A stretch of 45,253 nt of DNA, from assembly GCA_002269645.1 (NCBI GenBank), contig NIVC01000484.1, positions 1 to 45,253 of the forward strand. Reading direction: 5' to 3'. Of the stretch, positions 1 through 42,461 are shown piece after piece. Below the pieces are notes generated by a model. That model did no database searches. It worked only from the letters and a program-made list of their open reading frames with translations, and was not told the DNA's origin. How positions within the stretch are numbered: position 1 is the stretch's first letter; each line of letters opens with the position of its first letter. The DNA is from Macrostomum lignano. Its lineage: Eukaryota. A program made the position numbers and the translations under genes.

Positions 1-772
1 AACATTAAAGAGCCACTATGTCAGATATAATAGAGCCACCATGTCAAACGTTAAAGAGCCTCCATGTCGAACATTAAAGAGCTACTCAGCTACCATGTCA
101 AACATAAAAGAGCCACCATGTCAGATATAATAGAGCCACCATGTCAAACGTTAAAGAGCCTCCATGTCGAACATTAAAGAGCTACCATGTCAAACATAGA
201 AGAGCCACCATGTAAAACATATAGGTGACTCCATGTCAAACATTAAAGAGCCACATGTCAAACATTCAAGAGCCACCATGTCAAACGTTAAAAAGCCACC
301 ATGTCAAACATTAAAGAGCCACCTGTAAAACATATAGGTGACTCCACGTCAAACATTAAAGAGCCACCATGTCAAACATTCAAGAGCACCATGTCAAACG
401 TTAAAGAGCCACCATGTCGAAAATTAAAGAGCCACCATGCCAAACATTCAAGAGCACCATGCCAAACATTAAAGACCTACCACGTCGAACATAAAAGAGC
501 CACCATGCCAAACATAAAAGAGCACCATGTCGAACATTAAAGAACCACCATGTCGAACATTAAAGAGCACCATATCGAAATTAAAGAGCCACCAAGTCAA
601 ACATAAAAGAGCTACATGTAAAACATTCAAGAGCCACAATGTCAAACATAAAGGAGGCATCATGTCAAAAATATAAAGAGCAACCATGTCAAACATTAAA
701 GGCACCATGTCGAACATTAGAGAGCCACCATGCCAAACATAAAAGAGCCACCATGTCGAACATAAAAGAGCC
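1..772. repeat. 23-bp tandem satellite, block 1 (runs off the window start)
   Basis: Unit approx. ATGTCAAACATTAAAGAGCCACC (23 nt; three units translate as the 23-aa pseudo-repeat MSNIKEPPCRTLKSHHVKHKRAT). Copies are degenerate. Confidence 0.97.
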
Positions 773-799
773 CTATTTGTTATTTGTCTATTTGTTATT

Positions 800-851
800 T
801 GTAAAGAACAAGGATTCTATCCAGATGTCCCCCATCGGGGGCGAAGATTGC
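800..851 (+). mobile_element. Helitron-like 3' terminal motif, copy 1 (terminal CTAG missing)
   Basis: GAACAAGGATTCTATCCAGATGTCCCCCATCGGGGGCGAAGATTGC directly follows satellite block 1. It is nearly identical to 5445-5494 and contains a CCCCC-ATC-GGGGG hairpin. Confidence 0.45.
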
Positions 852-1424
852 AAATGAGTTGTCTGTGGGTATGCGATAGATTTCAGAAAAATTGGCTCAA
901 CCGATTTTCTTCAAACTTGCACCATTCGATCAGAAATTTTCCTGGGACGGTACATGCATCTTGGCTAAGAAATTGCTCAATTCTAAAGGGATTAAATATT
1001 CGAAAAACATGCTTTTTTGCAAAGGTCAAGCAAAATTTTCGACTTGAAATGCATTTTAAGAATGCTAGAGAAAAAACTGACTGGCTGAATTCTGATTGTG
1101 GTAATGATTGCATCACAACAAGTTCAAAACAGTGCGAAGAAATGCACACAAGACTTGATTGTAATTGCGTAACCATATTGCTAACTTGAATTTGAGACTG
1201 ATACTGGCTGACTGAGAAATTGATTATGTCATAACTTTTTACTCCAATTGACTTGCTGTAAGAATTGAATTATAAGGGCCACAATTCATGTTTCCAATTG
1301 AAAAGAGATAGCCCTGATGCGAACAGACTGGAATGCTAATGTAGCGACCTGGGTTCGAAATCTTTAGTACTGCAAAAAGATTTTTTTTATTAAAAACCTT
1401 AAAACACAACAAAACTGCTAAACA

Positions 1425-4400
1425 TCAAAGAAGCGCAATGTCAAACATAGAAGAGCCAACATATCGAACATAAAAGAGTTACCATGTCAAACATAAAAGA
1501 GCTACCATGTCGAACATTAAAGAGCCACCATGTCAAACATTTAAGAGCCACCATGTCAAACATAAAAGAGCCACCATTTCGAACATTAAAGAGCCACCAT
1601 TTCGAACATTAAAGAGCCACCATTTCGAACATTAAAGAGCCACCATTTTGAACATTAAAGAGCCACTATGTCAAACAATTAAGAGCCACCATGTCAAACA
1701 TAAAACAGCCACCATGTTAAACATAAAAGAGCCACTATGTCGAAAATTAAAGAGCCACCATGTCAAACATAAAAGAGCCACCATGTCGAACATTAAAGAG
1801 CCACCATGTCGAACATTAAAGAGCCACCATGTCAAACATAAAACAGCCAACATTTCGAAAATGAAAGAGCCACTATGTCAAACATTAAAGAGCCACCATG
1901 TCCAACATTAAAGAGCCAACATTTCAAACCTAAAAGAGCCACCATGTCGAACATTAAAAAGCCACCATGTCAAACATTAAAGAGCCACAATGTCAAACAT
2001 TAAAGAGCCACCATTTCAAACCTAAAAGAGCCACCATGTCGAACATTAAAGAGCCACCCTGTCGAACATCAAAGAGCCACAATGTCGAACATTAAAAAGC
2101 CACCATGTAAAAAATTAAAGAGCCACCATTTCAAACCTAAAAGAGCCACCATGTCGAACATTAAAGAGCCACCATGTCAAACATAAAAAAGCCACCATAT
2201 CAAACATAAAAGAACTACCATGTCAAACATTCAAGAGCCACCATGTCGAACATTAAAGAGCCACCATGTCAAACATAAAACAGAGCCACCATTTCGAAAA
2301 TTAAAGAGCCACCATGTAAAACATTAAAGAGCCACCATGTCGAACATTAAAGAGCCACCATGTCAAAGATAAAAGAGCCACCATGTCAAACATAAAAGAG
2401 CCACCATGTCAAACATAAAACAGCCAACATTTCGAAAATTAAAGAGCCACTATGTCAAACATTAAAGAGCCACCATGTCGAACATTAAAGAGCCACCATG
2501 TCAAACATAAAACAGACACCGTTAAAAACATTAAAGAGCCACCATGTCGAACATTAAAGAGCCACCATGTCAAACATAAAACAGAGCCACCATTTCGAAA
2601 ATTAAAGAGCCACCATGTCAAACATTAAAGAGCCACCATGTCGAACATTAAAGAGCCACCATGTCAAAGATAAAAGAGCCACCATGTCAAACATAAAAGA
2701 GCCACCATGTCAAACATAAAACAGCCAACATTTCGAAAATTAAAGAGCCACTATGTCAAACATTAAAGAGCCACCATGTCGAACATTAAAGAGCCACCAT
2801 GTCAAACATAAAACAGACACCGTTAAAAACATTAAAGAGCCACCATGTCGAACATTAAAGAGCCACCATGTCGAACATTAAAGAGCCACCATGTCAAACA
2901 TAAAACAGCCACTATGTCGAAAATTAAAGAGCCACCATGCCAAACATTAAAGAGCCACCATGTCGAACATTAAAGAGCCACCATGTCAAAGATAAAAGAG
3001 CCACCATGTCAAACATAAAAGAGCCACCATGTCAAATATTATAGAGCCACCATGTCAAACATTAAAGAGCCACCAAGTCAAACATGAAAGTGCCACCATG
3101 TAAAACATTAAAGAGCCACCATGTCGAACATTAAAGAGCCACCGTGTCAAACATAAAACAGCCACTATTTCGAACATTAAAGAGCCACCATGTCAAACAT
3201 AAAACAGCCACTATGTCGAACATTAAAGAGCAACCATGTCAGACATAAAACAGTGCCACCATTTCGAAAATTAAAGAGCCACCATGTCAAAAATTAAAGA
3301 GCCACCATGTCGAACATTAAAGAGCCACCATGTCAAAGATAAAAGAGCCACCATGTCAAACATTGAAGAGACCCCATGTCAAACATTAAAGAGCCACCAT
3401 GTCAAATATTAAAGAGTCACCAGTTCAAACATATACATGACTCCATGTCAAACATTGAAGAGCCACCATGTCGAACATTAAAGGGCCACCATGTCTAACA
3501 TAAAAGAGCCACCATGTCAAACATTAAAGGGCCACCATGTCAAACATTAAAGAGCCACCATGTCGAACATTAGAGAGCCACCATGTCAAACATAAAACAG
3601 ACACCATTAAGAACATTAAAGAGCCACCATGTCGAACATTAAAGAGCCACCATGTAGAACATAAAACAGCCACCATTTCGAAAATTAAAGAGCCACTATG
3701 TCAAACATTAAAGAGCCACCATGTCAAACATTAAAGAGCCACCATGTCAAACATAAAACAGACACCATTAAAAACATTAAAGAGCCACCATGTCGAACAT
3801 TAAAGAGCCACTATGTCAAACATAAAACAGCCACCATTTCGAAAATTAAAGAGCCACTATTTCAAACATTAAAGAGCCACCTTGTCAAAAATTAAAGAGC
3901 CACCATGTCGAACATTAAATAGCCACCTTATCAAACATTAAAGAGCCACCATGTCGAACATAAAAGAGCCACCATGTAGAACATAAAATAGTCACCATTA
4001 CAAACATGAAAGTGCCACCATGTAAAACATTAAAGAGCCACCATGTCAAACATTAAAGAGCCACCAGGTCAAACAGGAAAGTGCCACCATGTCAAATATT
4101 AAAGAGCCACCATGTCAAACATTAAAGAGCCACCAGGTCAAACATGAAAGTGCCACCATGTAAAACATTAAAGAGCCACCATGTCGAACATTTAAGAACC
4201 ACCATGTCAAACATAAAATAGCCACCATGTGAAACATATGCGTGACTCCATGTAAAACATTAAAGAGCTACCATATCAGACATATACATTACTCCATGTC
4301 AAACATATACGTGACTCCATGTTGGACATTAAAGAGCCACCATGTCGAACATTAAAGAGCTAACATGTTAAAAATACAAGAGCCACCATGTCAAACATAT

Positions 4401-5235
4401 ACATGACTCCATGTCAAACATTAAAGAGACACCATGTCTAACATTAAAGAGCCACCATGTCGAACATTAAAGAGCCACCATGTCAAACATTAAAGAGCCA
4501 CCATGTCTAACATTAAAGAGCCACCATGTCAAACATAAAACAGCCAACATTTCGAAAATTAAAAAGCCACCATGTCAAACATTAAAGAGCCACCATGTCG
4601 AACATTAGAGAGCCACCATGTCAAACATTAAACAGACACCGTTAAGAACATTAAAGAGCCACCATGTCGAACATTAAAGAGCCACCATGTAGAACATAAA
4701 ACAACCACCATTTCGAAAATTAAAAAGCCACTATGTCAAACATTAAAGAGCCACCATGTCAAACATTAAAGAGCCACCATGTCAAACATTAAAGAGCCAC
4801 CATGTCAAACATATACATGACTCCATGTCAAACATTGAAGAGACACCATGTCTAACATTAAAGAGCCACCATGGCAAACATATACATGACTCCATGTCAA
4901 ACATTAAAGAGACAACATGTCAAACATTAAAGAGACACCATGTCAAACATTAAAGAGCCATAATGTCAAACATTAAAGAGCCACCATGTCGAACATTAAA
5001 GAGCCACCATGTCAAACATAAAAGAGCCACCATGTCAAACATAAAAGTGCCACTATGTCAAACAATAAAGAGACACCATGTCAGACATTAAGAAAACCCC
5101 GAATCAAACATAAGAGAGCCACCATGTAGAACATAAAAGAGCCACCATGTCAAACATTAAAGAGCCACCAAGTCAAACATAAAATTTACACAATTTCAAA
5201 CGTAAAATTAAGCGTCATGCCAATTTTAAAGGAGC
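1425..5235. repeat. 23-bp tandem satellite, block 2 (~165 units) with higher-order duplications
   Basis: Same unit as 1-772, with TGTCGAAC/TGTCAAAC variants. A near-exact ~301-bp higher-order repeat is visible (2281 vs 2582, 2461 vs 2762), as is a 161-bp one (3537 vs 3698). Confidence 0.97.
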
Positions 5236-6031: not shown

Positions 6032-6084
<53 letters not shown>

Positions 6085-6085
6085 G

Positions 6086-6160
<75 letters not shown>

Positions 6161-6215
6161 GTGTCTGTGTGTCTGTTTGTCTGTCTGTCTGTGTCTGTCT
6201 GTCTGTCTGTCTGTG

Positions 6216-6250
<35 letters not shown>

Positions 6251-6275
6251 GTGTCTGTCTGTCTGTCTGTCTGTG

Positions 6276-6306
<31 letters not shown>

Positions 6307-6337
6307 GTGTCTGTGTGTCTGTTTGTCTGTCTGTCTG

Positions 6338-6380
<43 letters not shown>

Positions 6381-6381
6381 G

Positions 6382-6424
<43 letters not shown>

Positions 6425-6425
6425 G

Positions 6426-6486
<61 letters not shown>

Positions 6487-6501
6487 GTCTGTGTGTCTGT
6501 G

Positions 6502-6540
<39 letters not shown>

Positions 6541-6622
6541 TTGTCTGTCTGTTTGTCTGTCTGTCTGTTTGTCTGTCTGTCTATTTGTCTGTCTGTCTGT
6601 CTGTCTGTTTTAGTTTCTGTCA

Positions 6623-6664
<42 letters not shown>

Positions 6665-6680
6665 TTTAGTTTCTGTCAGT

Positions 6681-6728
<48 letters not shown>

Positions 6729-7295
6729 TTTAGTTTCTGTCAGTCTGTCTGTCTGTTTTAGTGTCTGTCAGTCTATCCACCTCCAATGGTCCCGCAGGCC
6801 GCAGCGAGTGCCTCCGCCAGCTGGAGCAGCTGTACCACAGTCTGGAAGACGCCGATCGGGTCTGCCTGCTGCGGCCCCGCTGGCCCCGCGGCCACGCTCT
6901 CCGTGGCGAGGCCCTGCTAGCCGGCGTCAGCCAGCCGAGGCTCTGGCAGCTTTTCGCGAAGCGGCCCGTCTCGATCCCGGCGACGAGCTGCTGCTCGATC
7001 GGGCGCGTCGTTCAGTGGAAGAGATTCGCAGCGAAGCGTCAGCAACCAGCCGGCTGATGAGGCGGTCAGTTCTGCTGGCTGCCGGAGTGGCGCTGCTGCT
7101 GGCTCTGCTGGATTTGGCGGCGCTGGAAGGCCGTCTGCACTCGCTGCTGCCAGCGTGGCTGTTATACAGCCTGGCCTACTGTCTGTCATTTTGCTGCTGT
7201 TTCGGCATTGGCTGGGCGTACAGATGGCTGCTACGACAGCATAAGCGAGACCTGTTAAAAAAACCCATTGATTTGTTGGAGCACCTCAAGCAGAG

Positions 7296-7299
<4 letters not shown>
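5760..7299 (+). CDS. TPR-repeat protein with predicted C-terminal transmembrane segments (2 exons, ~225 aa; apparent 1-nt frameshift)
   Basis: Exons 5760-5934 (GCTG|GTGAGT) and 6798-7299 (CCCGCAG|) join in phase 1 to give [47 protein letters not shown], a TPR pattern. The frame shifts near 6925 into [18 protein letters not shown], then hydrophobic stretches ([16 protein letters not shown]; [26 protein letters not shown]). The start codon is uncertain. Confidence 0.75.
6031..6772. repeat. (TCTG)n microsatellite filling the TPR-gene intron
   Basis: ~740 bp of TCTG/TGTG/TTTG units between donor 5935 and acceptor 6797. Confidence 0.98.
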
Positions 7300-8104: not shown

Positions 8105-8875
8105 AGTATAAAGTGGGTTTTATCAAGAGATTTTAGTATAACTAACTAGCTAGTTACTAGATATATGCCACTCTTAATCGAGGTTGTGAAAAACTAGACC
8201 ATAGTCTTATTTTCAGTAGTTGGTTAGTTTAAATTTATTGACGCAGTCTAAAATTTCCTCTCCTTCCTCGGGGGCTTTAAGCCTCCGCAGCATATGGGGT
8301 TAATAATGAACAGCACGCATTTAACTCGATGTACACCAGTGAACGAAAGACCGACGAAACTTAGCCTAGGCGGAAGGTCCAATCCGGCTCAACCAATGAG
8401 AGAGCAGTAAGGAGAGGTATGAAAGTCAGAGGACGTAACTCAGCCTAGGCGGCAGGTCCACTCCGGCTCAGCCAATGAGAGAGCAGTAAGGAGAGATGTG
8501 AAAGTCAGAGGACGTAACTCAGCCTAGGCGGCAGGTCCAATCCAGCTCAGCCAATGAGAGAGCAGTAAGGAGAGATGTGAAAGTCAGACGGACGAAACTC
8601 AGCTTAGGCCAGGCCCAAATAATCTAATTCAGCCAATGAGAGAACAGTAAGGAGAGAGGTCAAAGTCAGACACAAGCGGGCAAGAGAAAAGCCAAACTGT
8701 TTATCGACCTGAGCTTGCTGGGAATTTGGGAGTTGAGGCGCCGTCTCACCTCTTGCAAACACACTGGATTTTTCCAGTTTCCCTGCAATCAAGATGAAGG
8801 AAATCTAGATGAAGATGAATATGATAATTAAACGGATCTGCTTGTCGAAAGCCAGAGTCGATTGTCGCAGCGTCG
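8105..8875 (+). repeat. Dispersed element copy A, with four ~80-bp CCAAT-containing tandem monomers
   Basis: Monomers start at ~8353, 8432, 8511 and 8591 (GACG.AACTCAGCCTAGGCGGCAGGTCCA.TCCGGCTCAGCCAATGAGAGAGCAGTAAGGAGAG). Both flanks are homologous to the reverse complement of 21445-22225. Confidence 0.8.
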
Positions 8876-9130
8876 AAGACGAAACAAATTGTAAAATTTG
8901 TGAGTCTTAATTTTACTAATTTGTAAGGGGAAAGCTCATTATACTAGTAAAAAGAGAACATTATTTTAAGAGTAACTATAGAGTAACATCGAGCTGTTGT
9001 TCTACGAGTAGTAACTGCAGGTTTACCATAGATAAACTTAATCGATAAAATATCGATTTTATTGCAGCACTTATCACTACTGCAAGTATTAAAACTAGCA
9101 AATTTTTCGTTTAAATTCACAGCGACCAAG

Positions 9131-11109
9131 ATGCAGCAACACATCAGCCTGTCTGACTGGGATTTATCCAGCGGTAAATCTGTTGTAGTAATGACCGCCA
9201 CAACTCCCAGAGATCCCTACTATGGAAAATACTTCAACGAGATTTTTAATTTTCAAATCGATTTGGGCAAGAAGATTCTGTACGATGGCGGAGATAATTT
9301 CCTTGTACTGGCTGACCCCAGCGTGGCGGACAAGTTCGGTCTGGGTTGCCGGCCAAATGCGTGGCCGAGTACTTAATCGATGACATCTGGGTTAGAGATT
9401 TTGCGCCCATTGGCTTGGTGCGACACGCTTGGTTTAAGTGCGTTTATTATTATATCGTTAGAAACCTCTAATTGTCAAAATCTCGCCAAGCCGTGCCAGC
9501 CTTTCAGATCCTCAATTGCTGGGCCAGCCTTTCAGATCCTCAATTGCTGGGCCAGCCTTTCAGATCATCAATTGCTGTGCCAGCCTCTCAGATCCTCAGT
9601 TTCTGTGCCAGCTTCCCAGATTCTCAGTTTCTGTGCCAGCTTCCCAGATCCTCAGTTGCTGAGCCAGCCTCTCAGGTCATTAGTTGTTAGGCCAGCCTTT
9701 TATTGCTGAGCCATGCAGCCTCTGAAATCCTCACTTGCTGGGCCAGCCTCCCAGATCCTCAAGTTGCTGGGCCAGCCTCCCAGATTCTCAGTTGCTGGGC
9801 CAGCCTCCCAGATCCTCAGTTGCTGGGCCAGCCTCATAGATCCTCAGCTGCTGCGGGCCATTGCCGCTGCCCTCAACACAGATACCCATACAGACAAGCA
9901 TTTATAAAAACCGCCATCCGCAGGTACCAGCCCAGCTACTTAAACAAGTCGGAAGCATCCAGCGTTCAGCAGCAGTTCCGCAGATTTCTCAGCCTGAACA
10001 GTCACCTTTTCGGCGACTTGCACTCAGCTGCAGCCGGAGACCCCACAGCTGCATCTCTCCGACTCGACGGCGGAAACGTGGTAGACAATCAGCCAGCTGC
10101 AGCGCCTGCCGACTCCTTAGCCGTGGTAACTCGTCGAGTAGTTCGCGACAATCGACGTCAGCTGACTGAGGATCGCCTGATGGCTGTTTTGCGTCGTCAG
10201 CTGGATTGTCGGCGTCTGGCAGCGATCCCCGAGCCAGATAATGACACGACAGGCCACGCCGACGGTCTGGTGGCTTTCATTGACGAGAATCGGTTGGCTG
10301 TGCAACTGCAAACTGACGCAGGCAGCGATAGAGACGATGCTGAGAGTCGCCTGCTGATGCAGAAGCTCGCTGATCAGCTGGGCAGCGGCGTGCGGCTTGT
10401 GAAGCTGGAGGCTTCGGCACCCGTTAGACAGGTAAGATGTGTACGAGATTCCCTCACATCCCATCAGATCCTCAGGTTGATCCGGCATCTACCATATCTC
10501 AGTTGCTGGGCGACAGACTCCCAGATCCTCCTCAGTTGCTGGGCGACAGACTCCCAGATCCTCCTCAGTTGCTGGGCGACAGACTCCCAGATCCTCAGTT
10601 GCTGGGCGACAGACTCCCAGATCCTCCTCAGTTGCTGGGCGACAGACTCCCAGATCCTCAGTTGCTGGGCGACAGACTCCCAGATCCTCCTCAGTTGCTG
10701 GGCGACAGACTCCCAGATCCTCAGTTGCTGGGCGACAGACTCCCAGATCCTCCTCAGTTGCTGGGCGACAGACTCCCAGATCCTCAGTTGCTTGGCTCGT
10801 GTTTAAAGCAAATCCCCTTATCACTGCCAATCCAACTGTTGAATCCGTCAGACCTGGCGTGGATTCGACTCAGCCTGCGGCCTCCACGTCAACCTGCTGG
10901 CCACCAGGCGCAGTCTATACGTGCCGGTGTTCGGCTCGGATGAAGCCAACAGGAAGCTGGGCCAATCAGCGGAGCTGGACAGTCGAGTGCTAGCGGCAAT
11001 CCGAGCGAATACAAGCAAAACAGTGGTGCCAGTTGATGTACCGAATGCGATCTGCCGGATGGGCGGCAGCGTTCGATGCCTGACTTGGGCTTTCGCGCAG
11101 TCTTTGTAG
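9131..11109 (+). CDS. Agmatine deiminase / Porphyromonas-type peptidyl-arginine deiminase family protein (3 exons, ~357 aa; apparent 1-nt frameshift at ~9338)
   Basis: Exons 9131-9437 (TTTAA|GTGCGT), 9924-10431 (CCGCAG| ... CAG|GTAAGA) and 10852-11109 (CGTCAG|) join in phases 2 and 0. Motifs: [19 protein letters not shown] (across intron 1), [39 protein letters not shown]. The exon sum is 1073 nt, exactly one base short of 358 codons. Confidence 0.85.
9490..9855 (+). repeat. 28-bp CCCAGATCCTCAGTTGCTGG-family minisatellite in deiminase intron 1
   Basis: Units such as GCCAGCCTCCCAGATCCTCAGTTGCTGG. Confidence 0.9.
10460..10795 (+). repeat. 30/33-bp variant of the same minisatellite in deiminase intron 2
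   Basis: CAGACTCCCAGATCCTC(CTC)AGTTGCTGGGCGA, about 10 copies; explains the spurious [10 protein letters not shown] tail of ORF 9703..10806. Confidence 0.95.
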
Positions 11110-11159: not shown

Positions 11160-11495
11160 CAATTAGGCGCCAAGGTCAAGATTTTAGCGCCACTGTCAAT
11201 ATTTTAGCGCTAATTAAGCGCCACGGTCAAGATTTTAGCGCTAATTAGGCGCCACGGTCAAGATTTTAGCGCTAATTAGGCGCCACGGTCAAGATTTTAG
11301 CGCTAATTAGGCGCCACGGTCAAGATTTTAGCGCTAATTAGGCGCCACGGTCAAGATTTTAGCGCTAATTAGGCGCCACGGTCAAGATTTTAGCGCTAAT
11401 TAAGCGCCACGGTCAAGATTTTAGCGCTAATTAAGCGCCACGGTCAAGATTTTAGCGCTAATTAAGCGCCACTGTCAAGATTTTAGCGACTATTA
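11160..11495. repeat. 31-bp tandem repeat, about 10 copies
   Basis: GCGCCACGGTCAAGATTTTAGCGCTAATTAG repeated just downstream of the deiminase stop codon. Confidence 0.95.
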
Positions 11496-12179
11496 GGACC
11501 CACAAACAAGATTTTTTACAATAAACAATAAATAACTTATTAAAACATTCCAATAATAATTCTTTGATTTCGTAAGATTTATTATGAATTATGCATTCAA
11601 ATATAATATGTTAGCAATCAGGCTTCGCATAAGAATTCATAAACGAAGCTAAATATGGTCATGAAGAATCAAAATACGCTCGTAACTAAGCTTTGAGATG
11701 GAATTGTTTTCTTTTCTCTAACAACAAATAATCAAAGCAGAAAAGACACAATTAATATTACAACGCAAACTGACAACACACGAGAGGTGCCACACAGGAG
11801 ACAAAGGATTCAAGTCAAAACAAAGCAAAAAAAGCGAAGGTAAAACTTGTTCATGCCGCTTTTATTAGAAAATGTACTATTAATGACTAATAAGACAATA
11901 ATTAAAGTTTATTGGAATTCGCCTTGATGGATAATTAGTCTGAAAATTTTATGGAAGAAAGGAAAGCCTCGACCACGAAATTTAGCGGCGTAAAACAATA
12001 TTATTTATAACAAAGCAGATTGAAAATCAAAAGTAAAAATAGTTCGAACCTGTGTACACAACGAAAAATCTAATAGATCAGTTCTAATGACCGTTGGTAG
12101 ATAGTCTGCTTAATTTATAGAATTTACAAGCAAAATGACAGCAAAACGGGAATTGCGAAATTTTGTTAACACTTACTGT

Positions 12180-12722
12180 CTAGAGGCTGGCATAGCAACT
12201 GAGGATCTGGGAGGCTGGCATAGCAACTGAGGATCTGGGAGGCTGGCATAGCAACTGAGGATCTTTGAGGCTGGAATAGCAACTGAGGATCTGGGAGGCT
12301 GGCCCAGCAACTGAGAATCTGGGAGACTGACAGCAACTGAGGATCTGGGAGGCTGGCATAGCAACTGAGAATCTGGGAGACTGACAGCAACTGAGGATCT
12401 GGGAGGCTGGCATAGCAACTCAGGATCTGGGAAGCTGGCATAGCAGCTGGGGATCTGGAAGGCTGGCCCAGCAACTGAGTATCTGGGAGACTGGCCCAGC
12501 AACTGAGGATGTTGGAGGCTGGCCCAGCAACTGAGGATCTGGGAGGCTGGCATAGCAACTGGGGATCTGGGAGGCTGGCATAGCAACTGGGAATCTGGGA
12601 GGCTGGCCCAGCAACTGAGGATCTTGGAGGCTGGCCCAGCAACTGAGGATCTGTGAGGCTGGCCCAGCAACTGAGGATCTGGGAGGCTGGCCCAGCAACT
12701 GATGATCTGGGAGGCTGGCAGG
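12180..12722 (-). repeat. 28-bp CCCAGATCCTCAGTTGCTGG-family minisatellite (reverse orientation)
   Basis: Plus strand reads GCAACTGAGGATCTGGGAGGCTGGC(CCA/ATA), about 19 copies. Confidence 0.95.
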
Positions 12723-13502: not shown

Positions 13503-16500
13503 CTATTTCTTAGACGCGGCGGCAGCGATGCCAGAGCACAGGTCGCGATGCAGCACGCTGCCCAGAGTCATCTGTTCGCAGTGGACTCTCAGCAGATTGG
13601 CCTGCCGATCCAACGCCACGTAGACTGGAATTGGCCGACTGGCGCAGGACCGGCCGGCGAACCACAGCTGTCCGGTTGGGGCGCCGGACACCGCCACCAG
13701 ATTGGCGCTGGATCGGACAGCTTCGGCCAGGTCCGAGTCGCTTAACTGGCTGGCGGCTTCGGGTAGGCGGCCTTAAAAAGGACACGGTGTACTATTGCAG
13801 CTCAATTTAGGTCTATATGTACTTTTGTAGACTAATCAGGGACACATGTACTTTTGTATGATACAAAAACGTGTACTTTTTAGCCGGATTAAAACAATAT
13901 TTTGCAGCCTAATTAAGGACAGTACATGTACGAAGTATGTACTTTTGTAGCATAATTTGGGTCCATATGTACTTTTGTGAGACTAATCAGGGACACGTAT
14001 TTTTTAATTTTAGCACAATACAACATGTGTACTTGTGTTACCCCATGAAAGACAAAATGTACTTTTGTATGAATCAAAACCGTGTACTTTTTAGCCTGAT
14101 TAAGATTAGTATGTACTTTTGTAGCTGAATTTAGGACAACCTGTACTCTCGTAGCGCATTACAAGAACCATAGGTATTTATAGCTAAATACGAGTAAATT
14201 GAAGATTTAGTGTACTTTTGTATTTTAGTTAAGAAGAATCTGTACTTGACCATTTTTTAGAGGTAGGGGGGGGGTTGTGTGCACCCTGGCGCACTTTAAG
14301 CGACATTGGCACACAACCGGCGAGAGGCATTACTGCCCATTCCGCCGACTCCCCTGAGCAGGCATACAAGCGCGCGGATACGTACGCAGGCACACACTCA
14401 CACAGGAGTGTACAGCGGCCCTAACTTTATTTTATCGTTAGGCATGTACACTTCACTGTGCCTTGGGGGTTGGCTCTCAAGGCCGTTAATTGCACGAGCA
14501 GAGCCAAGCCGAGATTCCAATTCAGCCCCAAATTAATGTGACTGCATTTGGAATCGAGCCTGGGCCGCTGGCACACCAGAGCAGCTGCGCTACCGCTGGG
14601 CTACGGCCCCCCTCTGTACTTGACCATATAAGGATTATAACAATCAATTTACTAATCTACCTTTCTCCTCATTAAGTCCTTTTAGCTTGCCAGACTCGGC
14701 AGTAAACTGCTGAGCAGACATAGTAACCGGGGCAAGCAGTTCCCCAACCGGAGGCTGGACGCTAGCCCGAATCTCCTGGGCGCCATTGTCCCAGCGCAGT
14801 AACAGCTGACAGGCTGTGGTTGAGTCGCCCCAGGCCACTTCAGCCTGTCGGGTGGTATTAACGCCAGGCTCCAGGGTGTCAATGGGTTCCGGCGGTTGCA
14901 GAGCCGGTCCGGCGGCGTGCTGCAGGGTCACGTGACGCATCGCGGCGCTGCTGTGATTGGTGAAGACTAGGCTAAGAGCGATTCGACCGCTGGCTAGGCA
15001 GGTGCGAGGGAAGGAGTAGTCCACCTGGGGGATTAGATGGGGCATAAGTGTTATATTATGTAATTCGCTTTTACAAGCTCACTCAATTTATATACAGGTT
15101 AGTAGTCGATGTAGCCTGTCAATAAGAACCCATTTTGAGCTTCAATTAGACGTTAATTAGGGGAAAAAATAATTATTAGGCGACAATTAGAAGCCAAATT
15201 GGGCGACAATTAGAAGCGAAATTAAGCGCCAATTAGAAGTCAAATTAAGCGACAATTAGAAGCCAATTTAGGGACAATTAGAAGCCAAATTAAGTGACAA
15301 TTAGAAGCCAATTCAGGGACAATTAGAAGCCAAATTAAGTGACAATTAGAAGCGAATTTAGGGACAATTAAAAGCCAATTCAGGGACAATTAGATGCAAA
15401 ATTAAACGACAATAAGAAGTCAAATTAAGCGACAATTAGAAGCCAATTTAGGGACAATTAGAAGCCAAATTAAGTGACAATTAGAAGCCAATTCAGGGAC
15501 AATTAGAAGCCAAATTAAGTGACAATTAGAAGCCAATTTAGGGACAATTAAAAGCCAATTCAGGGACAATTAGATGCAAAATTAAACGACAATAAGAAGT
15601 CAAATTAAGCGACAATTAGAAGCTAAATTAAGTGACAATTAGATGTTAAATTAAGCGAGAATTATAAGTCAAATAAATCGTCAATTAGAAGCTAAATTAA
15701 GCGATAATTAGAAGCCAAATTAAGCGCCAATTAGAAGCCAAATCGAGCCAAAATTAGAACCTAAATTAAGCGACAATTAGAATTCAAATTAGGCGACAAT
15801 TAGAAGGCCAAATTAAGCACCATTTGGAAAGCTAAATTAAACGCTAAATAGAAGCCAAATAAATCGTCAATTAGAAGCCAAATTAAGCATTAATTAGAAG
15901 CCAAATTAGGCGCTAATTAAAAGACAAATTAAGCACCTTTTAGAAGCCAAATTAGGCATTTTTTTAAACCAAATTAGGCGCCAATTATTAGCCGTTTTTT
16001 CTAAAGACAAAAGAAAAAGAAACAATACGTATATACGCACCTGCAAGCCAGAAGCGCTGTACTTATTAACCAGACTGTACATCCTGTTAGGCGTGGGCAG
16101 AAGCAGCAGATCATCCGGCATCAGACCGAACGGATCAACTGGCCGACTGGTAGACTTCGACGGAGCAGCTGGGGCAGCGGTTGGATTAGTCGGGCCGAAA
16201 TCTAACAGGCTGGCTTCCGCCGGCTGTTGCTGCTTCTGCTTGGATTTCTGCTCTTTCGGCTTGACAGTCACGGCTGGTTTTGCATTTTGTTGCTGCTTAG
16301 TTTTAGGCGGCGCCGCCACTGAAGAGTCTGATGAGTCTTCTTCTTCTTCATCTGAATCTTCATCTTCGTCTGAGTCGTTTTCTTCTTCTTCAGAAGATTC
16401 CTGCGTCTTCACGGGCTTTTTCTGCTGAACGATCGGCTTCTTTTTAGTATTCTCTTCCTCGCTGGAATCCTCTTCTTCATCATCATCTTCCTCTTCTTCT

Positions 16501-19500
16501 TCTTCTTCATCTTCATCTTCCTCCTCATCTTCTTCATCATCTTCCTCATCTTCGTCTTCATCTTCTGATTCGTCTGAGCTGCCGGAAATCCTGTCGACGC
16601 CGCCGCGAGAATAAGCGGCCATAGACGATGGCGCCGGAGCGGGCGCGGCCACAGCCCGAACGCTCGAATCCGGCTGCTCAGCAGGCCAGTCTGGCAGAGC
16701 CTGGTAGCCCGGCAGTCGGAGATTAAGCAGGTGCGACAGGCTGCCCAGCTGGAATGGCGACTTTTCGGCGAATCTAGACTGAACCTCCGGAGCGGGCTTC
16801 GGCGCTAATAGTATCTTCTTCACTCGCTTGCCGGCTAGCAGTGTCGGTTCAGCGACGCTCGGATCCGGCAGGACTAGCGGGCGTAGGAATCTGCTGCGAT
16901 CGCGGATGTCGTAGTTCTGATCGTATTTGGCCAGGTTCAGCACGTACTGGGCTAGCAGACGGGCCTGCTTGGGATTGCACACACACAGCTTGGCGGCCAG
17001 GTTCACGATCTGCAGCTTCACCTGCGGCGATGAAGCGGTATGCTAATCTTGAGGATCAGGTAAGGTTTTCCCAGCAACTGACACTCTGGGAGGCCGTGGC
17101 CCAGCAAATCAGGATCTGGGAGGCTGGCGGCCCGGCAACTGAGGATCTGGGAGGCTGGCGGCCCGGCAACTGAGGATCTGGGAGGCTGGCGGCCCGGCAA
17201 CTGAGGATCTGGGAGGCTGGCGGCCCGGCAACTGAGGATCTGGGAGGCTGGCGGCCCGGCAACTGAGGATCTGGGAGGCTGGCGGCCCGGCAACTGAGGA
17301 TCTGGGAAGCTGGCCCAGCAACTCAGGGTCTGGGAGGCTGGCCCAGCAACTCAGGATCTGGGAGACTGGCATAGCAACTGACACTCTGCATGGGAGGCTG
17401 TTCCAGCAACTGACACTATGGGAGGCTGGCCCAGCAACTGACACTCTGGGAGGCTGGCCCAGCAACTGACACTCTGGGAGGCTGGCCCAGCAACTGAGGA
17501 TCTGGGAGGCTGGCTCAGCAACTAAGGATATGGGTAACTGAGTGACAAACCCTCACCTGGTCCTCCTCCTCCAAGAATGACTTGGCAAACTTGCGCAGCA
17601 CGTCAGGTGCAATCTTCGGTATGCGATCGCAGTACTCGCCAATCAGCCACAGAATAGAGGCCCTGGCCCTAGGTATGGCGATGCCATCAACCAGCCTGGC
17701 GAGGTCAACAATCATGTGACTGTGATCGCTTGTTTGCACCTGTAGTAGTTTCTTAATTACTACTATAGCCTCAGCAACAACAGATTCGTCTTTTTTAGCC
17801 AGCAGACTGACAAGGTTATTCAGGCAGGTGTCGGTGGTGTCGGGCAGCTGGGAGGCGCATCGACCGATGGCGCGTACAGCGGCGCTTGCCAGTTCAGAGT
17901 CTGGCGACGATACGTAGGCTTGCAGTTCGCGGAGCAGAACCTACAGTATGTGAACGAATAATGGGATTGAAATAGCCATTCATGAGCTTACAGGGCCAAT
18001 GTAAAAACCAGTCACCAAGGTCTAGAAGGTACATGTACAGGGTACACCCTGTGCGAGCGAGAGTTCTTAATGGCTCATTGGGTCTGCGAAGTGGAATGGC
18101 TCTTAAGTCGCCAAGGCTTATAAGAGGAGAATTGCTACTGAGATCCCAAGGCTTAAAAAACACATCAAATAGAACTAACTCTTTACAGACTATTATTATG
18201 TTTGTAAGCTTTGATCCCCCCAAAGGGGGCTTCGTGCGCTAGTCCACATACTAAGTTGATAAAAGTCTAATTACTGTCAATTAGACAATAAAACTCACCG
18301 GAAAATTAGAATCGGTAGCCAGATTAGTAAGAATATCCAGTTTCACCAATTTCACACTACTCGAGTCGGTGCTATGAATGTAGAAACACTTCAAATGACC
18401 GGATAGCAGATGCGGCGAACTGGCCGACAGGGCCGACAGACTGGTCAGTACGCAGCTTTGCACTTCGGGCGAGGCGCGTAACAAGCGAACTAGATGACGG
18501 ATTACAATATTCATGTAGCCGGGAGGGGCGCAGTGGTAATACAGCTGGGCTACAGCCATCACTACAGCCGCGTTCTGGCTTTGGAATAGCGGTCGAACTG
18601 TCCGCAGTAGCAGCTCGTGATCCGGGTCTAGCGGGTTTTGCCTCTCCTGCTTTTGGTTCTGCTGGGCTGGATCTAGGAACTGCGTGCGGACGTACCTGGA
18701 TTGGGACAGGGTGGGGACAGATGGATAGATAGGTAGATAGAGCAACAGTATCCACGTTGGGGTAGAATGAGGGTAGACACTGGGGTAGAGTGAGAGAGTA
18801 GACACAGTGGGGTAGAGTGAGAGTAGACACAGTGGGGTAGAGTGAGAGTAGACACAGTGGGGTAGAGTGAGAGTAGACACAGTGAGGACGAGGTAAAGTG
18901 AGATAGTAGTAGACACACTGGGTAGAGAGAGTAGACAGAGAAGTAGAGTGAGATAAGAGTAGGCACTATGGGGTAAGAGTGAGAGAGTAGACAAAGTGAG
19001 GTAGAGTGAGGGAGTAAACACAGTAGGGTAGAGTGAGAGACTAGACACAGTGGGGTAGAGTGGATAGTAGACACAGTGAGGTAAAGTGAGATAGTAGTAG
19101 ACACACTGGGTAGAGAGAGAGAGTAGACAGTGAAGTAGAGTGAGATAAGAGTAGGCACTATGGGGTAAGAGTGAGAGAGTAGACACAATGGGGTAGAGGG
19201 AGAGTAGAAGAAGTGATAGTGAGATGGTTTGCACAGCAGCAGGGGGCTCACCTAGTCAGCATATTGATAATGACAACCTGTCCCCAGTCTTGCACATCGG
19301 CTAGCAGTTCGCACAACTTCCTATAATTCTTGTGAATCAAATCGATTCGATTCGGACAAATCTCTTCAAAAGCTTGTATAGCAACGCCAACAACTAGTGT
19401 GGTTTTATCGGCTAGCAGTTTCTCAATAACGCCCATTAACTGTGGCTTAGTCTCTGGGTCTAGGCTATAGATTTTCGGTATGGCCAATGCGGCAGTTTTA

Positions 19501-20036
19501 CGAACGTAGGCTGACATATCGGACACAGCGTCTTGCAGAGCGAGAGTCTGTATTGGCAGGATCACGGGCACTCGAATACTAGTTAAGACTCGAAGAGCGC
19601 TAGCCCTAATCAGCTGATTAGGATCTTTCAAAGCGCGCTGGAATGTAGCAATAGACAGCAAAGCCAAGTCTTGCTGCTCCTCGGCGTAGCGAGTCAAGTA
19701 AACGTAAACCAATTTTTTCACTTCCGAATTTTTCGATACGACATTTTTAACAACAGACGGAAACAAATCCGAGCAATCTTTGCCCTTAGCAACCATAGCT
19801 ATGATTCTGCGCATAGCTTCGAGTTTCTGCGAATCTTTGCTAGACTCTAACATCGCTCTTAGGTCGTCGTGCTTTTTGAAATCGCCGGAGAAGAACGCGG
19901 AGCCAGCTGGATCAGCGGCGCTACTCCGGGTGCCTCGGTCGCCATCCTGACTGCCCGTTGATGAGGCGTGATCTGGCGGGGGCAGGCCCAGCTGGTCCAT
20001 GGGCGAATTGTAGGGTTGGAAACCGCCGTTGCTCAT
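13503..20036 (-). CDS. AP3B1: AP-3 complex beta subunit (beta3-adaptin), 6 exons, ~1059 aa
   Basis: complement(join 19252-20036, 18299-18695, 17557-17940, 16041-17021, 14661-15024, 13503-13771): all GT-AG, phases consistent, 3180 nt open. Adaptin trunk ([29 protein letters not shown]; [26 protein letters not shown]; [15 protein letters not shown]), acidic Ser/Glu/Asp hinge, clathrin-box-like SLLDF and a C-terminal appendage. B1 vs B2 paralogy is not resolvable. Confidence 0.96.
13790..14225. repeat. Degenerate tandem repeat (TGTACTTTTGTA core) in the last AP3B intron
   Basis: More than 12 recurrences of GTACTTTT with partially duplicated context (ACTAATCAGGGACAC at ~13831 and ~13983). Confidence 0.75.
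14420..14612 (-). mobile_element. Putative tRNA-derived SINE
   Basis: Minus strand reads GGGGCCGTAGCCCAGCGGTAG (A-box-like) ... GGCTCGATTCC (B-box-like) at tRNA spacing, followed by a non-tRNA body and an A-rich tail (TAAAATAAAG). No clean cloverleaf. Confidence 0.55.
15175..15990. repeat. 22/23-bp minisatellite with a 180-bp higher-order duplication (AP3B intron 4)
   Basis: Unit GACAATTAGAAGCCAAATTAAG(T/C). 15241-15420 and 15421-15600 differ at about one base. Confidence 0.95.
17060..17525 (-). repeat. 28/31-bp CCCAGATCCTCAGTTGC-family minisatellite in AP3B intron 3
   Basis: Plus strand GCAACTGAGGATCTGGGAGGCTGGCGGCCCG (31 bp), about 6 copies, plus 28-bp variants. Confidence 0.95.
18210..18242 (+). 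mobile_element. Helitron-like 3' terminus in AP3B intron 2
   Basis: GATCCCCCCAAAGGGGGCTTCGTGCGCTAG|T: the same hairpin + ~10 nt + CTAG|T layout as 5467-5495. The 5' end was not identified. Confidence 0.45.
18770..19225. repeat. Purine-rich ~25-bp minisatellite in AP3B intron 1
   Basis: GTAGACACAGTGGGGTAGAGTGAGA variants, with a ~188-bp duplicated block (18891 vs 19079). Confidence 0.9.
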
Positions 20037-42225: not shown

Positions 42226-42282
<57 letters not shown>

Positions 42283-42283
42283 C

Positions 42284-42334
<51 letters not shown>

Positions 42335-42335
42335 C

Positions 42336-42366
<31 letters not shown>

Positions 42367-42379
42367 CAGTTAGTTAGTC

Positions 42380-42413
<34 letters not shown>

Positions 42414-42429: not shown

Positions 42430-42461
<32 letters not shown>

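What the first reader, a model, noticed from the sequence alone, without database searches (positions are those of the whole stretch)
9131..11109. Intron-bearing, bacterial-style agmatine/peptidyl-arginine deiminase in an animal genome
Seen: no single ORF in the track shows this gene, but three exons (split by repeat-filled introns and one frameshift) splice into a ~357-aa protein with [22 protein letters not shown] and GGSVRCLTW. Established: these match the catalytic Asp, His-x-Asp and nucleophilic Cys of the Porphyromonas-type PAD / agmatine deiminase family (PF04371). That family is mainly bacterial and plant, and is distinct from vertebrate PADI enzymes. Inference: the N-terminus ([21 protein letters not shown]...DNFLVLAD) and the F.YQPSYL motif recall bacterial members, so this is either a domesticated horizontal transfer or a patchily retained ancient gene. 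It could give an invertebrate an agmatine-to-N-carbamoylputrescine polyamine route or a protein citrullination activity.
Basis: partly seen in the sequence, partly recalled or inferred. Interest (0 to 1): 0.78.

Follow-up and report, generated by a model that had tools for sequence, protein, structure and literature searches.

The report
Flatworm agmatine-deiminase-like gene, one frameshifted copy
The window holds a real, spliced and transcribed gene of the flatworm Macrostomum lignano for a divergent bacterial-type agmatine-deiminase-family enzyme; this copy lacks one base, an intact twin lies elsewhere in the genome, and relatives in nematodes and other eukaryotes argue against a recent bacterial transfer.

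Summary
Three exons (9131-9437, 9924-10431, 10852-11109, + strand), split by two GT-AG introns filled with minisatellites, splice into a 357-aa protein once a missing base at 9337/9338 is restored. The protein scores 68.9 bits against Pfam PF04371 (cut-off 25). Its predicted structure (pLDDT 90.7) matches solved agmatine deiminases best, and every catalytic and agmatine-contacting residue is kept.

The window is a Macrostomum lignano contig. GenBank already holds an RNA-seq-derived partial model of this copy (PAA82243.1, 169 aa; UniProt names it "Agmatine deiminase"). An intact 359-aa twin (PAA91538.1) sits in a collinear duplicate that has TTCCGG where the window has TTCGG. So this copy is either a young pseudogene or carries an assembly error.

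The protein is not a canonical AguA (14 bits against a 382-bit cut-off), and no prokaryotic homologue exceeds about 38% identity. Its nearest relatives share an 11-residue insertion. They lie on eukaryote-like contigs and in four nematode genera, where the catalytic residues are lost. This argues against a recent, Macrostomum-specific transfer and for an old, patchily kept eukaryotic clade of probable bacterial origin.

The substrate, most likely agmatine or something similar, is inferred and not shown. I rate it a new member of a known kind, of moderate interest.

The parts
9121..9122 (+). AG just upstream of the annotated transcript start; likely spliced-leader trans-splice acceptor or mRNA 5' end (inference)
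   Evidence: The twin's RNA-seq-derived CDS starts at ACC AAG ATG, 6 nt before the ATG. In the window that is 9125, two bases after the AG in ttcacAG|CG. M. lignano transcript ends were cut at trans-splice sites (PMC5730564).
9131..9437 (+). Exon 1 (M1 to the first two bases of K103). Encodes the conserved YYGK...FQI N-terminal part and the DDIWVRD motif (D85 9382-9384, W87 9388-9390, D90 9397-9399).
   Evidence: The junction WFK|YQPSYL matches homologues without a gap and is identical in the deposited twin.
9337..9338 (+). Frameshift site: one C is missing (TTCGG here, TTCCGG in the twin). Without it the ORF stops at 9374-9376.
   Evidence: exon alignment with L005; frames. With the C restored the peptide reads ADKFRSGLPAK.
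9438..9923 (+). Intron 1 (GT...AG, phase 2), holding a 28-bp minisatellite at 9495-9853
   Evidence: The splice sites are identical in the twin copy.
9924..10431 (+). Exon 2. Encodes DGGN (10066-10077), D210 (10243-10245), and H214 and D216 of TGHADG (10255-10263).
10432..10851 (+). Intron 2 (GTAAGA...CAG, phase 0), holding a 33/63-bp minisatellite at 10498-10796 of the same repeat family as in intron 1
   Evidence: The junction is confirmed by deposited protein PAA82243.1 at 100% identity.
10852..11109 (+). Exon 3. Encodes [10 protein letters not shown], the clade-specific 11-residue insertion ([11 protein letters not shown]), and GGSVRC with nucleophile C348 (11077-11079). Stop codon TAG at 11107-11109.
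11187..11525 (+). 3' flank: a 31-bp minisatellite (11187-11515) followed by the first AATAAA (11520); possible 3' UTR and poly(A) signal (inference)

Best explanation
This is a resident nuclear gene of the flatworm Macrostomum lignano. It encodes a divergent member of the PF04371 (agmatine deiminase / Porphyromonas-type PAD) branch of the pentein superfamily of guanidine-modifying enzymes.

It is transcribed, cis-spliced at two GT-AG introns, and probably trans-spliced at its 5' end. The enzyme most likely works like an agmatine iminohydrolase. Asp90 and Asp216 hold the guanidinium group. Cys348 attacks its carbon. His214 acts as general acid/base, ammonia leaves, and the thiouronium intermediate is hydrolysed to a ureido product (N-carbamoylputrescine if the substrate is agmatine). 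Asp210, Asp85 and Trp87 form the channel that binds a positively charged tail.

The window copy is one of two collinear duplicates produced by the recent genome or chromosome duplication of the DV1 line. It lacks one C at 9337/9338 and so encodes only truncated products, unless the deletion is an assembly error. The twin copy is intact.

The gene belongs to a small clade marked by an 11-residue insertion. Most of that clade's members lie in eukaryotic DNA, including catalytically dead versions in nematodes. The gene therefore entered, or was kept in, animals long before Macrostomum. The clade sits inside a very broad bacterial and archaeal subfamily, so a bacterial origin is plausible.

Shown: gene structure, family, fold, residue conservation, duplication, and the relatives. 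Inferred: substrate, trans-splicing, direction and age of any transfer, and whether the frameshift is real.
For: Family and fold:
- PF04371 scores 68.9 bits against a cut-off of 25.
- A profile of the subfamily hits solved agmatine deiminases at E 1e-25.
- The AlphaFold model has pLDDT 90.7 and pTM 0.92. Its best Foldseek matches are agmatine deiminases (E 2e-17, TM 0.64-0.71). PPAD comes next (E 1e-11 to 1e-12), and DDAH, ADI and PADI are far weaker.

Active site:
- D85, W87, D90, G152, G153, N154, H214, D216, G343, G344 and C348 are invariant across 41 subfamily members.
- The MtAIH residues that contact agmatine are Asp89, Trp91, Asp94, Asp220, His224, Asp226, Gly361 and Cys366 (PMC6447857). 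By my reading of the motif spacing, they correspond to D85, W87, D90, D210, H214, D216, G343 and C348.

Host integration:
- The neighbouring genes are animal genes.
- GC3 is 0.61, against 0.52-0.70 for the neighbours.
- The same locus occurs on a 1.12-Mb M. lignano contig with the same neighbours.
- The deposited models come from RNA-seq (StringTie/TACO; PMC5730564) and use my junctions.

Duplicate and frameshift.

Clade:
- The shared insertion is shown.
- Nematode members are Romanomermis, Aphelenchus, Parascaris and Toxocara.
- The twin copy aligns over its full length at 30% identity with the Romanomermis protein, with no gap in the insertion.
- Contexts look eukaryotic for P0002 (Sulfotransfer_2 neighbour), P0226 (tandem paralogues next to DRY_EERY/Surp genes), P0216 (MMACHC) and P0295 (split gene in a very large assembly).
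- The NJ tree recovers the clade, with Mlig sister to P0001/P0002.
- Prokaryotic homologues reach only 28-35% identity by tblastn, across many phyla.
Against: - The protein is not a canonical AguA: TIGR03380 scores 14.4 bits against a cut-off of 381.8.
- No member of this subfamily has a known activity.
- Five prokaryotic homologues have no aguB or polyamine gene next to them.
- The insertion clade has only 32% NJ bootstrap support.
- Pairwise scores link the nematode group no more closely to the Macrostomum group than to some prokaryote-like sequences.
- One clade member (P0207) lies on a bacterial-looking contig, so several independent transfers from one bacterial lineage cannot be excluded.
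- No intron position is shared with the nematode genes.
- The two M. lignano copies differ by 9 nonsynonymous and 2 synonymous changes, with about 1% divergence in exons and in unique intron sequence alike. So there is no evidence of current purifying selection; statistical power is very low.
Confidence: 0.6

Rival explanations
1. The gene came from a recent, Macrostomum-lineage-specific horizontal transfer from a bacterium and was then domesticated by gaining introns.
For: The subfamily is overwhelmingly prokaryotic. The closest relatives, P0001 and P0002, have no introns. No intron is shared with the nematode homologues. One member of the insertion clade looks bacterial.
Against: No prokaryotic sequence exceeds about 38% identity among 1.8 billion representatives and 185,579 species genomes. 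Composition matches host genes. The nearest relatives (41-66% identity) lie on eukaryote-like contigs or split genes. The 11-residue insertion is shared with nematode and other eukaryotic proteins.
Confidence: 0.12
2. The window copy is a true young pseudogene. The single-base deletion is real, this duplicate is decaying, and the twin carries the function.
For: The frameshift survived Pilon polishing with Illumina and RNA-seq reads (PMC5730564). GenBank annotates only the 169-aa C-terminal ORF for this copy. The DV1 line carries redundant duplicated chromosomes. The 9:2 ratio of nonsynonymous to synonymous changes between copies fits relaxed constraint.
Against: A one-base indel is a typical long-read consensus error in my experience, and I would expect polishing to be unreliable in blocks more than 95% identical (own knowledge). 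Everything else in this copy is intact, including splice sites and all catalytic codons. The locus is transcribed.
Confidence: 0.5
3. The enzyme acts on a guanidino substrate other than agmatine: free arginine, a guanidino acid, a methylarginine, or peptidyl or C-terminal arginine (citrullination).
For: It fails the AguA equivalog model. It is only 15-18% identical to solved agmatine deiminases. The subfamily has its own invariant features (YY near the N-terminus, T172/R174, SACG, and GGSVRC with Arg before the nucleophile). There is no aguB linkage in prokaryotes. PF04371 also includes PPAD.
Against: All MtAIH residues that contact agmatine, including the amine-binding Asp220 and Asp89 equivalents, are kept. 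Agmatine deiminases are clearly better structural matches than PPAD. PPAD's extra C-terminal domain is absent: the protein is 357 aa, all of it catalytic domain.
Confidence: 0.3
4. The gene is bacterial contamination or a mis-assembly and is not part of the animal genome.
For: The family is bacterial in type, and the exons are richer in GC (0.56) than the window as a whole (0.42).
Against: It has two spliceosomal introns filled with a host minisatellite that also occurs in the AP3B intron and the intergenic DNA. Animal genes flank it on both sides. The same arrangement occurs on an independent 1.12-Mb contig. GC3 equals that of the neighbouring host exons.
Confidence: 0.01

Closest known systems
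Agmatine deiminase / agmatine iminohydrolase (AguA, AIH; EC 3.5.3.12; e.g. PDB 6B10, 3H7C, 6NIB, 2JER, 3HVM)
   Same: It is in the same Pfam family (PF04371) and has the same five-bladed pentein fold. It is the best structural match (E 2e-17, TM 0.64-0.71). The Cys/His/Asp/Asp catalytic set and the Asp/Trp residues that line the agmatine channel are kept. It is a single-domain protein of similar length.
   Different: Identity is only 15-18%. It scores 14 bits on the AguA equivalog model (cut-off 382). The motif around the nucleophile is GGSVRC in this subfamily, against the GS(L)HC and GGNIHC seen in the solved deiminases aligned. The subfamily has its own N-terminal YY and SACG motifs. There is no linkage to aguB in the prokaryotic homologues examined. 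Activity is unknown.
Uncharacterised prokaryotic 'agmatine deiminase family protein' subfamily with the MGGSVRC motif (Acinetobacter, Roseivirga, Saprospiraceae, Anaerolineales, Nitrosopumilus, Gracilibacteria and others)
   Same: Alignments run full-length at 28-38% identity and share every invariant residue and subfamily motif. This is the true parent group of the flatworm protein.
   Different: The flatworm protein and its clade carry an 11-residue insertion after VPxFG. The Macrostomum/P0001/P0002 branch also lacks the C-terminal helix (G..A..LI.AAR). The flatworm gene has introns and eukaryotic low-complexity inserts.
Nematode PAD_porph-like proteins (Romanomermis A0A915JB91, Aphelenchus KAH7729845.1, Toxocara KHN75901.1, Parascaris A0A915CBD9)
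   Same: They share the insertion clade. The Romanomermis protein is 30% identical over the full length of the twin copy, and the insertion aligns without a gap. They are intron-bearing animal genes.
   Different: The nematode proteins have lost the Trp of DIW, the His of TGH and the nucleophile Cys (RC becomes RS), so they are presumably pseudoenzymes. Intron positions differ. Two of the three tested fall below the Pfam cut-off.
Porphyromonas gingivalis peptidylarginine deiminase (PPAD; PDB 4YT9, 5AK7)
   Same: It belongs to the same Pfam family and has the same catalytic-domain fold (E 1e-11 to 1e-12, TMq 0.63-0.64).
   Different: PPAD chains in the PDB are 417-438 residues, against 357 here, and the TM-score normalised to PPAD is only about 0.55. 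From my own knowledge, the extra PPAD length is an Ig-like domain and the enzyme is secreted; the flatworm protein consists of the catalytic domain only. Similarity is lower than to agmatine deiminases.
Vertebrate PADI1-4/6 (PF03068), reported as acquired by HGT from cyanobacteria (PMC8826395)
   Same: The shared pentein superfamily fold is only distantly similar (E about 1e-4). The theme is the same: a guanidine-modifying enzyme in animals with suspected bacterial ancestry.
   Different: It is a different Pfam family, with three domains and calcium dependence. The flatworm protein has no PF03068, PF08526 or PF08527 hit.

Membership tests
PF04371 PAD_porph (agmatine deiminase / Porphyromonas-type PAD family) | Pfam HMM score above the gathering threshold | tested here: met
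   68.9 bits, E 5.9e-19, cut-off 25, covering residues 67-351. The twin copy scores 72.3 bits.
PF04371 PAD_porph (agmatine deiminase / Porphyromonas-type PAD family) | Pentein (five-fold alpha/beta propeller) fold | tested here: met
   The AlphaFold model has pLDDT 90.7 and pTM 0.92. All 30 top Foldseek hits are agmatine deiminases, PPAD or uncharacterised putative deiminases of the same family, with probability 1.00.
PF04371 PAD_porph (agmatine deiminase / Porphyromonas-type PAD family) | Catalytic Cys nucleophile, His, and two guanidinium-binding Asp | tested here: met
   C348, H214, D216 and D90 are invariant in 41 aligned subfamily members and align to the catalytic residues of solved enzymes.
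Agmatine deiminase proper (AguA, EC 3.5.3.12; NCBIfam TIGR03380 equivalog) | Score above the equivalog cut-off | tested here: not met
   14.4 bits against a cut-off of 381.8. NF010070 scores 13.6 against 483.
Agmatine deiminase proper (AguA, EC 3.5.3.12; NCBIfam TIGR03380 equivalog) | Residues that bind the terminal amine and line the agmatine channel (MtAIH Asp220, Asp89, Trp91, Gly361) | tested here: met
   D210, D85, W87 and G343 occupy the same motif positions (residue roles from PMC6447857). This rests on sequence alignment only. I could not inspect the geometry because model coordinates are not exposed.
Agmatine deiminase proper (AguA, EC 3.5.3.12; NCBIfam TIGR03380 equivalog) | Pathway partners (N-carbamoylputrescine amidase or putrescine carbamoyltransferase; arginine decarboxylase) | tested here: inconclusive
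   None lies next to the gene in five diverse prokaryotic homologue loci. Their presence elsewhere in the M. lignano genome could not be searched with these tools.
Agmatine deiminase proper (AguA, EC 3.5.3.12; NCBIfam TIGR03380 equivalog) | Agmatine to N-carbamoylputrescine + NH3 activity | not testable with these tools
   Needs an enzyme assay.
Porphyromonas-type peptidylarginine deiminase (PPAD) | Catalytic domain plus extra C-terminal domain, and secretion | tested here: not met
   The 357-aa protein is entirely catalytic domain. PPAD chains are 417-438 aa, and the TM-score normalised to PPAD is about 0.55. I did not run a signal-peptide predictor.
Vertebrate PADI (PF03068 with PF08526/PF08527) | PAD_C, PAD_M and PAD_N domains | tested here: not met
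   No such Pfam hit at E <= 1. Only a superfamily-level fold resemblance, E about 1e-4.
Horizontally acquired gene in an animal | Physically integrated among host genes, with host-type gene structure | tested here: met
   Introns, host minisatellites, flanking AP3B, OATP and Peptidase_M24 genes, and a syntenic duplicate.
Horizontally acquired gene in an animal | Well-supported nesting within a prokaryotic donor clade, and absence from related animals | tested here: inconclusive
   The eukaryote-rich insertion clade sits inside a prokaryotic radiation in an NJ tree, but with 32% bootstrap. Homologues do exist in nematodes and in unidentified eukaryotes. No ML tree or systematic survey of metazoans was possible.
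Pseudogene | A disabling mutation confirmed in reads | not testable with these tools
   The one-base deletion is present in the assembly. No read data are available.

The most novel reading that the evidence does not exclude
An old, so far undescribed animal clade of bacterial-type agmatine-deiminase-like enzymes exists. It is catalytically competent in Macrostomum and several marine or unidentified invertebrates, tandemly expanded in at least one of them, and converted to a conserved pseudoenzyme across nematodes. If so, some animals have an agmatine (or other guanidino-compound) deimination step that textbook animal metabolism lacks. The clade would stem from one ancient bacterium-to-animal transfer, or from an ancestral eukaryotic gene lost almost everywhere.
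Probability: 0.3. Interest if true: 0.65.

Novelty: new member of a known kind. Interest (0 to 1): 0.45.

Why it matters
Animals are generally described as making putrescine through ornithine decarboxylase and removing agmatine with agmatinase; the agmatine deiminase route is treated as bacterial and plant (PMC6447857). A catalytically complete, expressed PF04371 enzyme in a tractable regeneration model (M. lignano has transgenesis, PMC5730564) would give a directly testable case of an extra guanidino-compound pathway in an animal.

The nematode relatives, which have lost the catalytic residues yet are kept from Enoplea to Chromadorea, would be a new pseudoenzyme family worth a look.

For genome annotation, the practical point is that the 169-aa model PAA82243.1 is a truncation artefact of a single missing base. 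The locus should be treated either as a full-length gene with an assembly error or as a pseudogenised duplicate.

Tried and rejected
- **Profile search for named eukaryotic homologues.** The third homologue search, run with a profile of the insertion clade, gave no new named eukaryotes. The word filter saturated on prokaryotic sequences.
- **JGI metagenome scans.** Three attempts failed or found nothing. I therefore could not read the DNA of the closest partial relative, P0315 (66% identity over exon 3; split gene on a 1.3-kb contig).
- **Accession look-ups in papers.** Searches for GCA_024449465, JAANSR and the SRA/ERZ accessions found nothing, so the organisms behind L001, L002, L006, L007, L089 and L090 stay unidentified.
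- **Literature on the gene.** Searches for agmatine deiminase in Macrostomum, Metazoa or invertebrates found no study of this gene or clade.
- **Gene neighbourhood in prokaryotes**. There is no conserved operon and no aguB, so context gives no functional clue.
- **Selection test between the two M. lignano copies**. Only 11 substitutions separate them, and exon divergence equals unique-intron divergence, so the test has no power.
- **Shared intron positions as evidence of common ancestry**. None is identical. The nearest cases are a nematode phase-2 intron two codons downstream of intron 1, and an intron in L006 three to four codons from intron 2, also phase 0. This is suggestive at most.
- **Programmed ribosomal frameshifting, as in antizyme.** Rejected, because the twin copy has no frameshift at the same site.
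- **Contamination.** Rejected (see rival explanations).
- **Introns created by insertion of the minisatellite element ('introner').** The boundaries show only 2-3 nt of possible target duplication (GT, CAG), which is not informative.
- **Active-site geometry.** I could not inspect it because model coordinates are not exposed.
Full report
**1. What is in the sequence**

On the + strand an ATG at 9131 opens an exon that runs to 9437. It is followed by a GTGCGT donor, a 486-bp intron (9438-9923), a 508-bp exon (9924-10431), a GTAAGA donor, a 420-bp intron (10432-10851) and a last exon (10852-11109) that ends in TAG.

Both introns are mostly minisatellite: 28-bp units at 9495-9853 and 33/63-bp units at 10498-10796.

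Exon 1 changes frame near 9337-9345. Adding one base gives a 357-codon ORF whose length at that point equals that of its homologues.

**2. Identity of the locus**

An exhaustive HMMER search found a deposited protein 100% identical to residues 189-357, spanning the exon 2/3 junction. It is PAA82243.1 (BOX15_Mlig025637g2) of Macrostomum lignano, on a contig of exactly the window's length. UniProt A0A267G880 names it "Agmatine deiminase".

The same 90% cluster holds PAA91538.1, 359 aa and full length, on the 1.12-Mb contig NIVC01000084.1. That region (L005) is collinear with the window across the whole stretch retrieved, window positions about 5.5-22 kb. It has the same neighbours: an upstream gene with a weak TPR_2 hit, and AP-3 beta downstream on the opposite strand.

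The two copies have identical splice sites. Their exons differ by 11 substitutions (9 nonsynonymous, 2 synonymous) and one indel: the window reads AAGTT-CGG where the twin reads AAGTTCCGG.

The published assembly is PacBio/Canu polished with Pilon. Its GenBank gene models derive from RNA-seq (StringTie/TACO/TBONE). The sequenced DV1 line carries large duplicated chromosomes, with 180 Mb in non-repetitive duplicate blocks at least 95% identical (PMC5730564).

Three conclusions follow:
- The gene is transcribed and spliced as modelled.
- The window copy is one of two duplicates.
- Its 169-aa annotation is simply the longest ATG-initiated ORF left downstream of the missing base.

Whether the missing C is real cannot be decided without reads.

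The twin's CDS starts 6 nt before the ATG, two bases after an AG (9121-9122 in the window). This fits a spliced-leader acceptor, but that is an inference.

**3. Family, fold and active site**

The spliced protein scores 68.9 bits on PF04371 (cut-off 25) and hits no other Pfam family. It scores only 14 bits on the AguA equivalog TIGR03380 (cut-off 382).

Single-sequence similarity to solved structures is marginal (E about 0.005). A profile of 41 subfamily members, however, hits agmatine deiminases at E 1e-25 over their full length.

AlphaFold2 with that alignment gives pLDDT 90.7 and pTM 0.92. Foldseek ranks agmatine deiminases first (6B10, 1XKN, 3H7C, 2CMU, 2JER, 6NIB; E about 1e-17, TM 0.64-0.71, 15-18% identity). 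PPAD follows at E 1e-11 to 1e-12. DDAH, arginine deiminase and human PADs are far behind.

D85, W87, D90, G152, G153, N154, R174, H214, D216, N286, G343, G344 and C348 are invariant in the subfamily.

In Medicago AIH the triad is Cys366/His224/Asp226. Asp94 helps hold the guanidine. Asp220 and Asp89 bind the terminal amine of agmatine, the latter through a water molecule. Trp91 lines the channel and Gly361 leaves room for water and ammonia (PMC6447857). By motif spacing and the printed alignments, I read these as C348, H214, D216, D90, D210, D85, W87 and G343 in the flatworm protein.

The catalytic machinery is therefore complete, and the channel residues suit a substrate with a cationic tail such as agmatine. 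That is an inference from alignment; no member of this subfamily has been assayed. Immediate neighbours of the gene in five diverse prokaryotic homologue loci include no aguB or other polyamine gene.

**4. Relatives and origin**

Among 1.84 billion representatives only 26 proteins reach E < 1e-30. The best non-self hit is 45% identical.

In 185,579 prokaryotic species genomes the subfamily (motifs DIWxRD and MGGSVRC) is widespread. It occurs in Gracilibacteria, Anaerolineales, Bathyarchaeota, Acinetobacter, Nitrosopumilus, Saprospiraceae, cyanobacteria and others. It never exceeds about 35% identity by tblastn, or 38% against P0002 by BLASTP.

A subset of sequences shares an 11-residue insertion after VPxFG, with the conserved pattern D.EN...G.S...D. 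It comprises:
- the two M. lignano copies;
- P0001 and P0002, from TARA and other marine metagenomes. They are intronless. P0002 lies beside a Sulfotransfer_2 gene on sparsely coding, 35%-GC contigs;
- P0226, one of three to four tandem paralogues next to genes with DRY_EERY, Surp and cystatin domains;
- P0216, next to MMACHC;
- P0295, a split gene on a contig of an NCBI assembly whose contig numbers run past 13 million;
- P0315, 66% identical over exon 3 and also split;
- proteins of the nematodes Romanomermis, Aphelenchus, Parascaris and Toxocara.

The nematode proteins align over their full length (30% identity to the twin copy for Romanomermis, no gap in the insertion). They have lost the Trp, the His and the nucleophile Cys. 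They are multi-exon genes among ordinary nematode genes.

One clade member, P0207, has a hydrophobic N-terminus that looks like a signal peptide and lies on a gene-dense contig with GFO_IDH_MocA and ParA-like genes. It looks bacterial.

A neighbour-joining tree recovers the insertion clade with no named prokaryote inside it, and places M. lignano sister to P0001/P0002. Bootstrap support is only 32%. Pairwise scores alone do not tie the nematode group to the flatworm group.

No intron position is shared between flatworm and nematodes. The nearest is a nematode phase-2 intron two codons downstream of intron 1. The L006 gene has a phase-0 intron three to four codons from intron 2.

The M. lignano exons have GC3 of 0.61, within the range of neighbouring host exons (0.52-0.70).

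Taken together, a recent Macrostomum-specific transfer is unlikely. The data fit an old presence in animals or other eukaryotes with patchy retention, ultimately of bacterial type. Several older transfers from one bacterial lineage that carries the insertion are not excluded.

**5. Selection and state of this copy**

Exon divergence between the two copies (about 0.9%) equals that of the unique intron segments (about 1%). The 9:2 ratio of nonsynonymous to synonymous changes is what neutrality would give. The duplicates are too young to test.

Long-term constraint is shown instead by two things. All invariant residues are retained, and the twin keeps an open 357-codon frame despite 55-60% divergence from its nearest relatives.

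I put the chance that the window's deletion is real at about one half.

**6. Verdict**

The gene is already deposited and auto-named, but I found no study of it or of its animal relatives.

It is a new member of a known enzyme family, in an unusual host group. A possibly interesting animal clade and a nematode pseudoenzyme branch are attached to it. The specific activity, the reality of the frameshift, and the age and direction of any transfer remain open.

Noticed in passing
window 9495-9853, 10498-10796, 12183-12720, 17070-17514: One minisatellite family (core CAGTTGCTGG..CC.CAGATCCT, units of 28-33 bp) occurs four times within 8 kb. It lies in + orientation in both introns of the deiminase-like gene. 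It lies in the opposite orientation in the downstream intergenic DNA and at 17070-17514, between the AP-3 beta ORFs. It creates long spurious ORFs (for example 9703-10806 and 12166-12670).
   Followed up: partly
window 8353-8670 and 21668-22044: Two tandem arrays of a 79-80-bp unit containing GCCAATGAGAG are reverse complements of each other. They bracket the roughly 13-kb segment that holds the deiminase-like gene and the AP-3 beta gene. The twin locus L005 has them too. Their function is unknown.
   Followed up: no
window 1-5184: A 23-bp satellite (AAACATTAAAGAGCCACCATGTC, about 190 copies in two blocks) fills the first 5 kb and shows strong AT skew. A related-looking 23-bp array lies at 15175-15979.
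   Followed up: no
window 6032-6774: A (TCTG)n microsatellite of about 187 copies produces three overlapping 190-260-aa 'CLSV' ORFs that are not genes. Directly downstream (6709-7299) is an ORF that aligns with the region of the twin locus where a 214-aa gene with a weak TPR_2 hit is annotated. The window ORF itself gave no Pfam hit.
   Followed up: partly
window 14644-20036 (- strand): An AP-3 complex beta subunit gene in several exons (Adaptin_N and AP3B1_C hits). It is 70-80% identical to many bilaterian orthologues, and no near-identical match was listed. Its acidic Glu/Asp/Ser-rich linker exon lies at 15906-17021.
   Followed up: partly
window 23255-24516 (- strand): Exons that look like a PA2G4/EBP1-type gene. 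One ORF (24082-24516) hits Peptidase_M24 at E 1e-13; the other (23255-23770) has no Pfam hit.
   Followed up: partly
window 34884-36656: A GC-rich (about 0.6) retroelement remnant on the - strand, with gag-like ORFs (PNMA and zf-CCHC hits) and overlapping antisense ORFs.
   Followed up: partly
window 39425-43449 (+ strand): An organic-anion-transporter (OATP/SLCO) gene in at least four exons. Its N-terminal exon holds a perfect 33-bp coding repeat (39479-39615, 4.2 copies of NGGHEHSTAAP). Minisatellites of 25 bp and 4 bp lie at 41381-41682 and 42212-42561, between its ORFs.
   Followed up: partly
L089 1366-5843: An unidentified eukaryote (SRA run SRR13325274) carries three full-length tandem paralogues of the same deiminase-like gene, plus a fragment of a fourth. 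At least two of them have intact catalytic motifs. They lie next to genes with DRY_EERY/Surp and cystatin domains.
   Followed up: partly
L006 300-560: The intron of the homologue in assembly GCA_024449465.1 contains a pair of inverted repeats of about 60 bp (MITE-like) and, further on, repeated GGATCCACC motifs. The contig ends in long G and C homopolymers.
   Followed up: no
L004 8669-9754: Another subfamily member (P0186, 31% identical to the window protein, without the insertion) lies on a 66-kb metagenome contig with IFRD, EF-hand, HlyIII/PAQR and fatty-acid desaturase genes. This is probably a eukaryote too, which hints at more than one eukaryotic acquisition of this subfamily.
   Followed up: no
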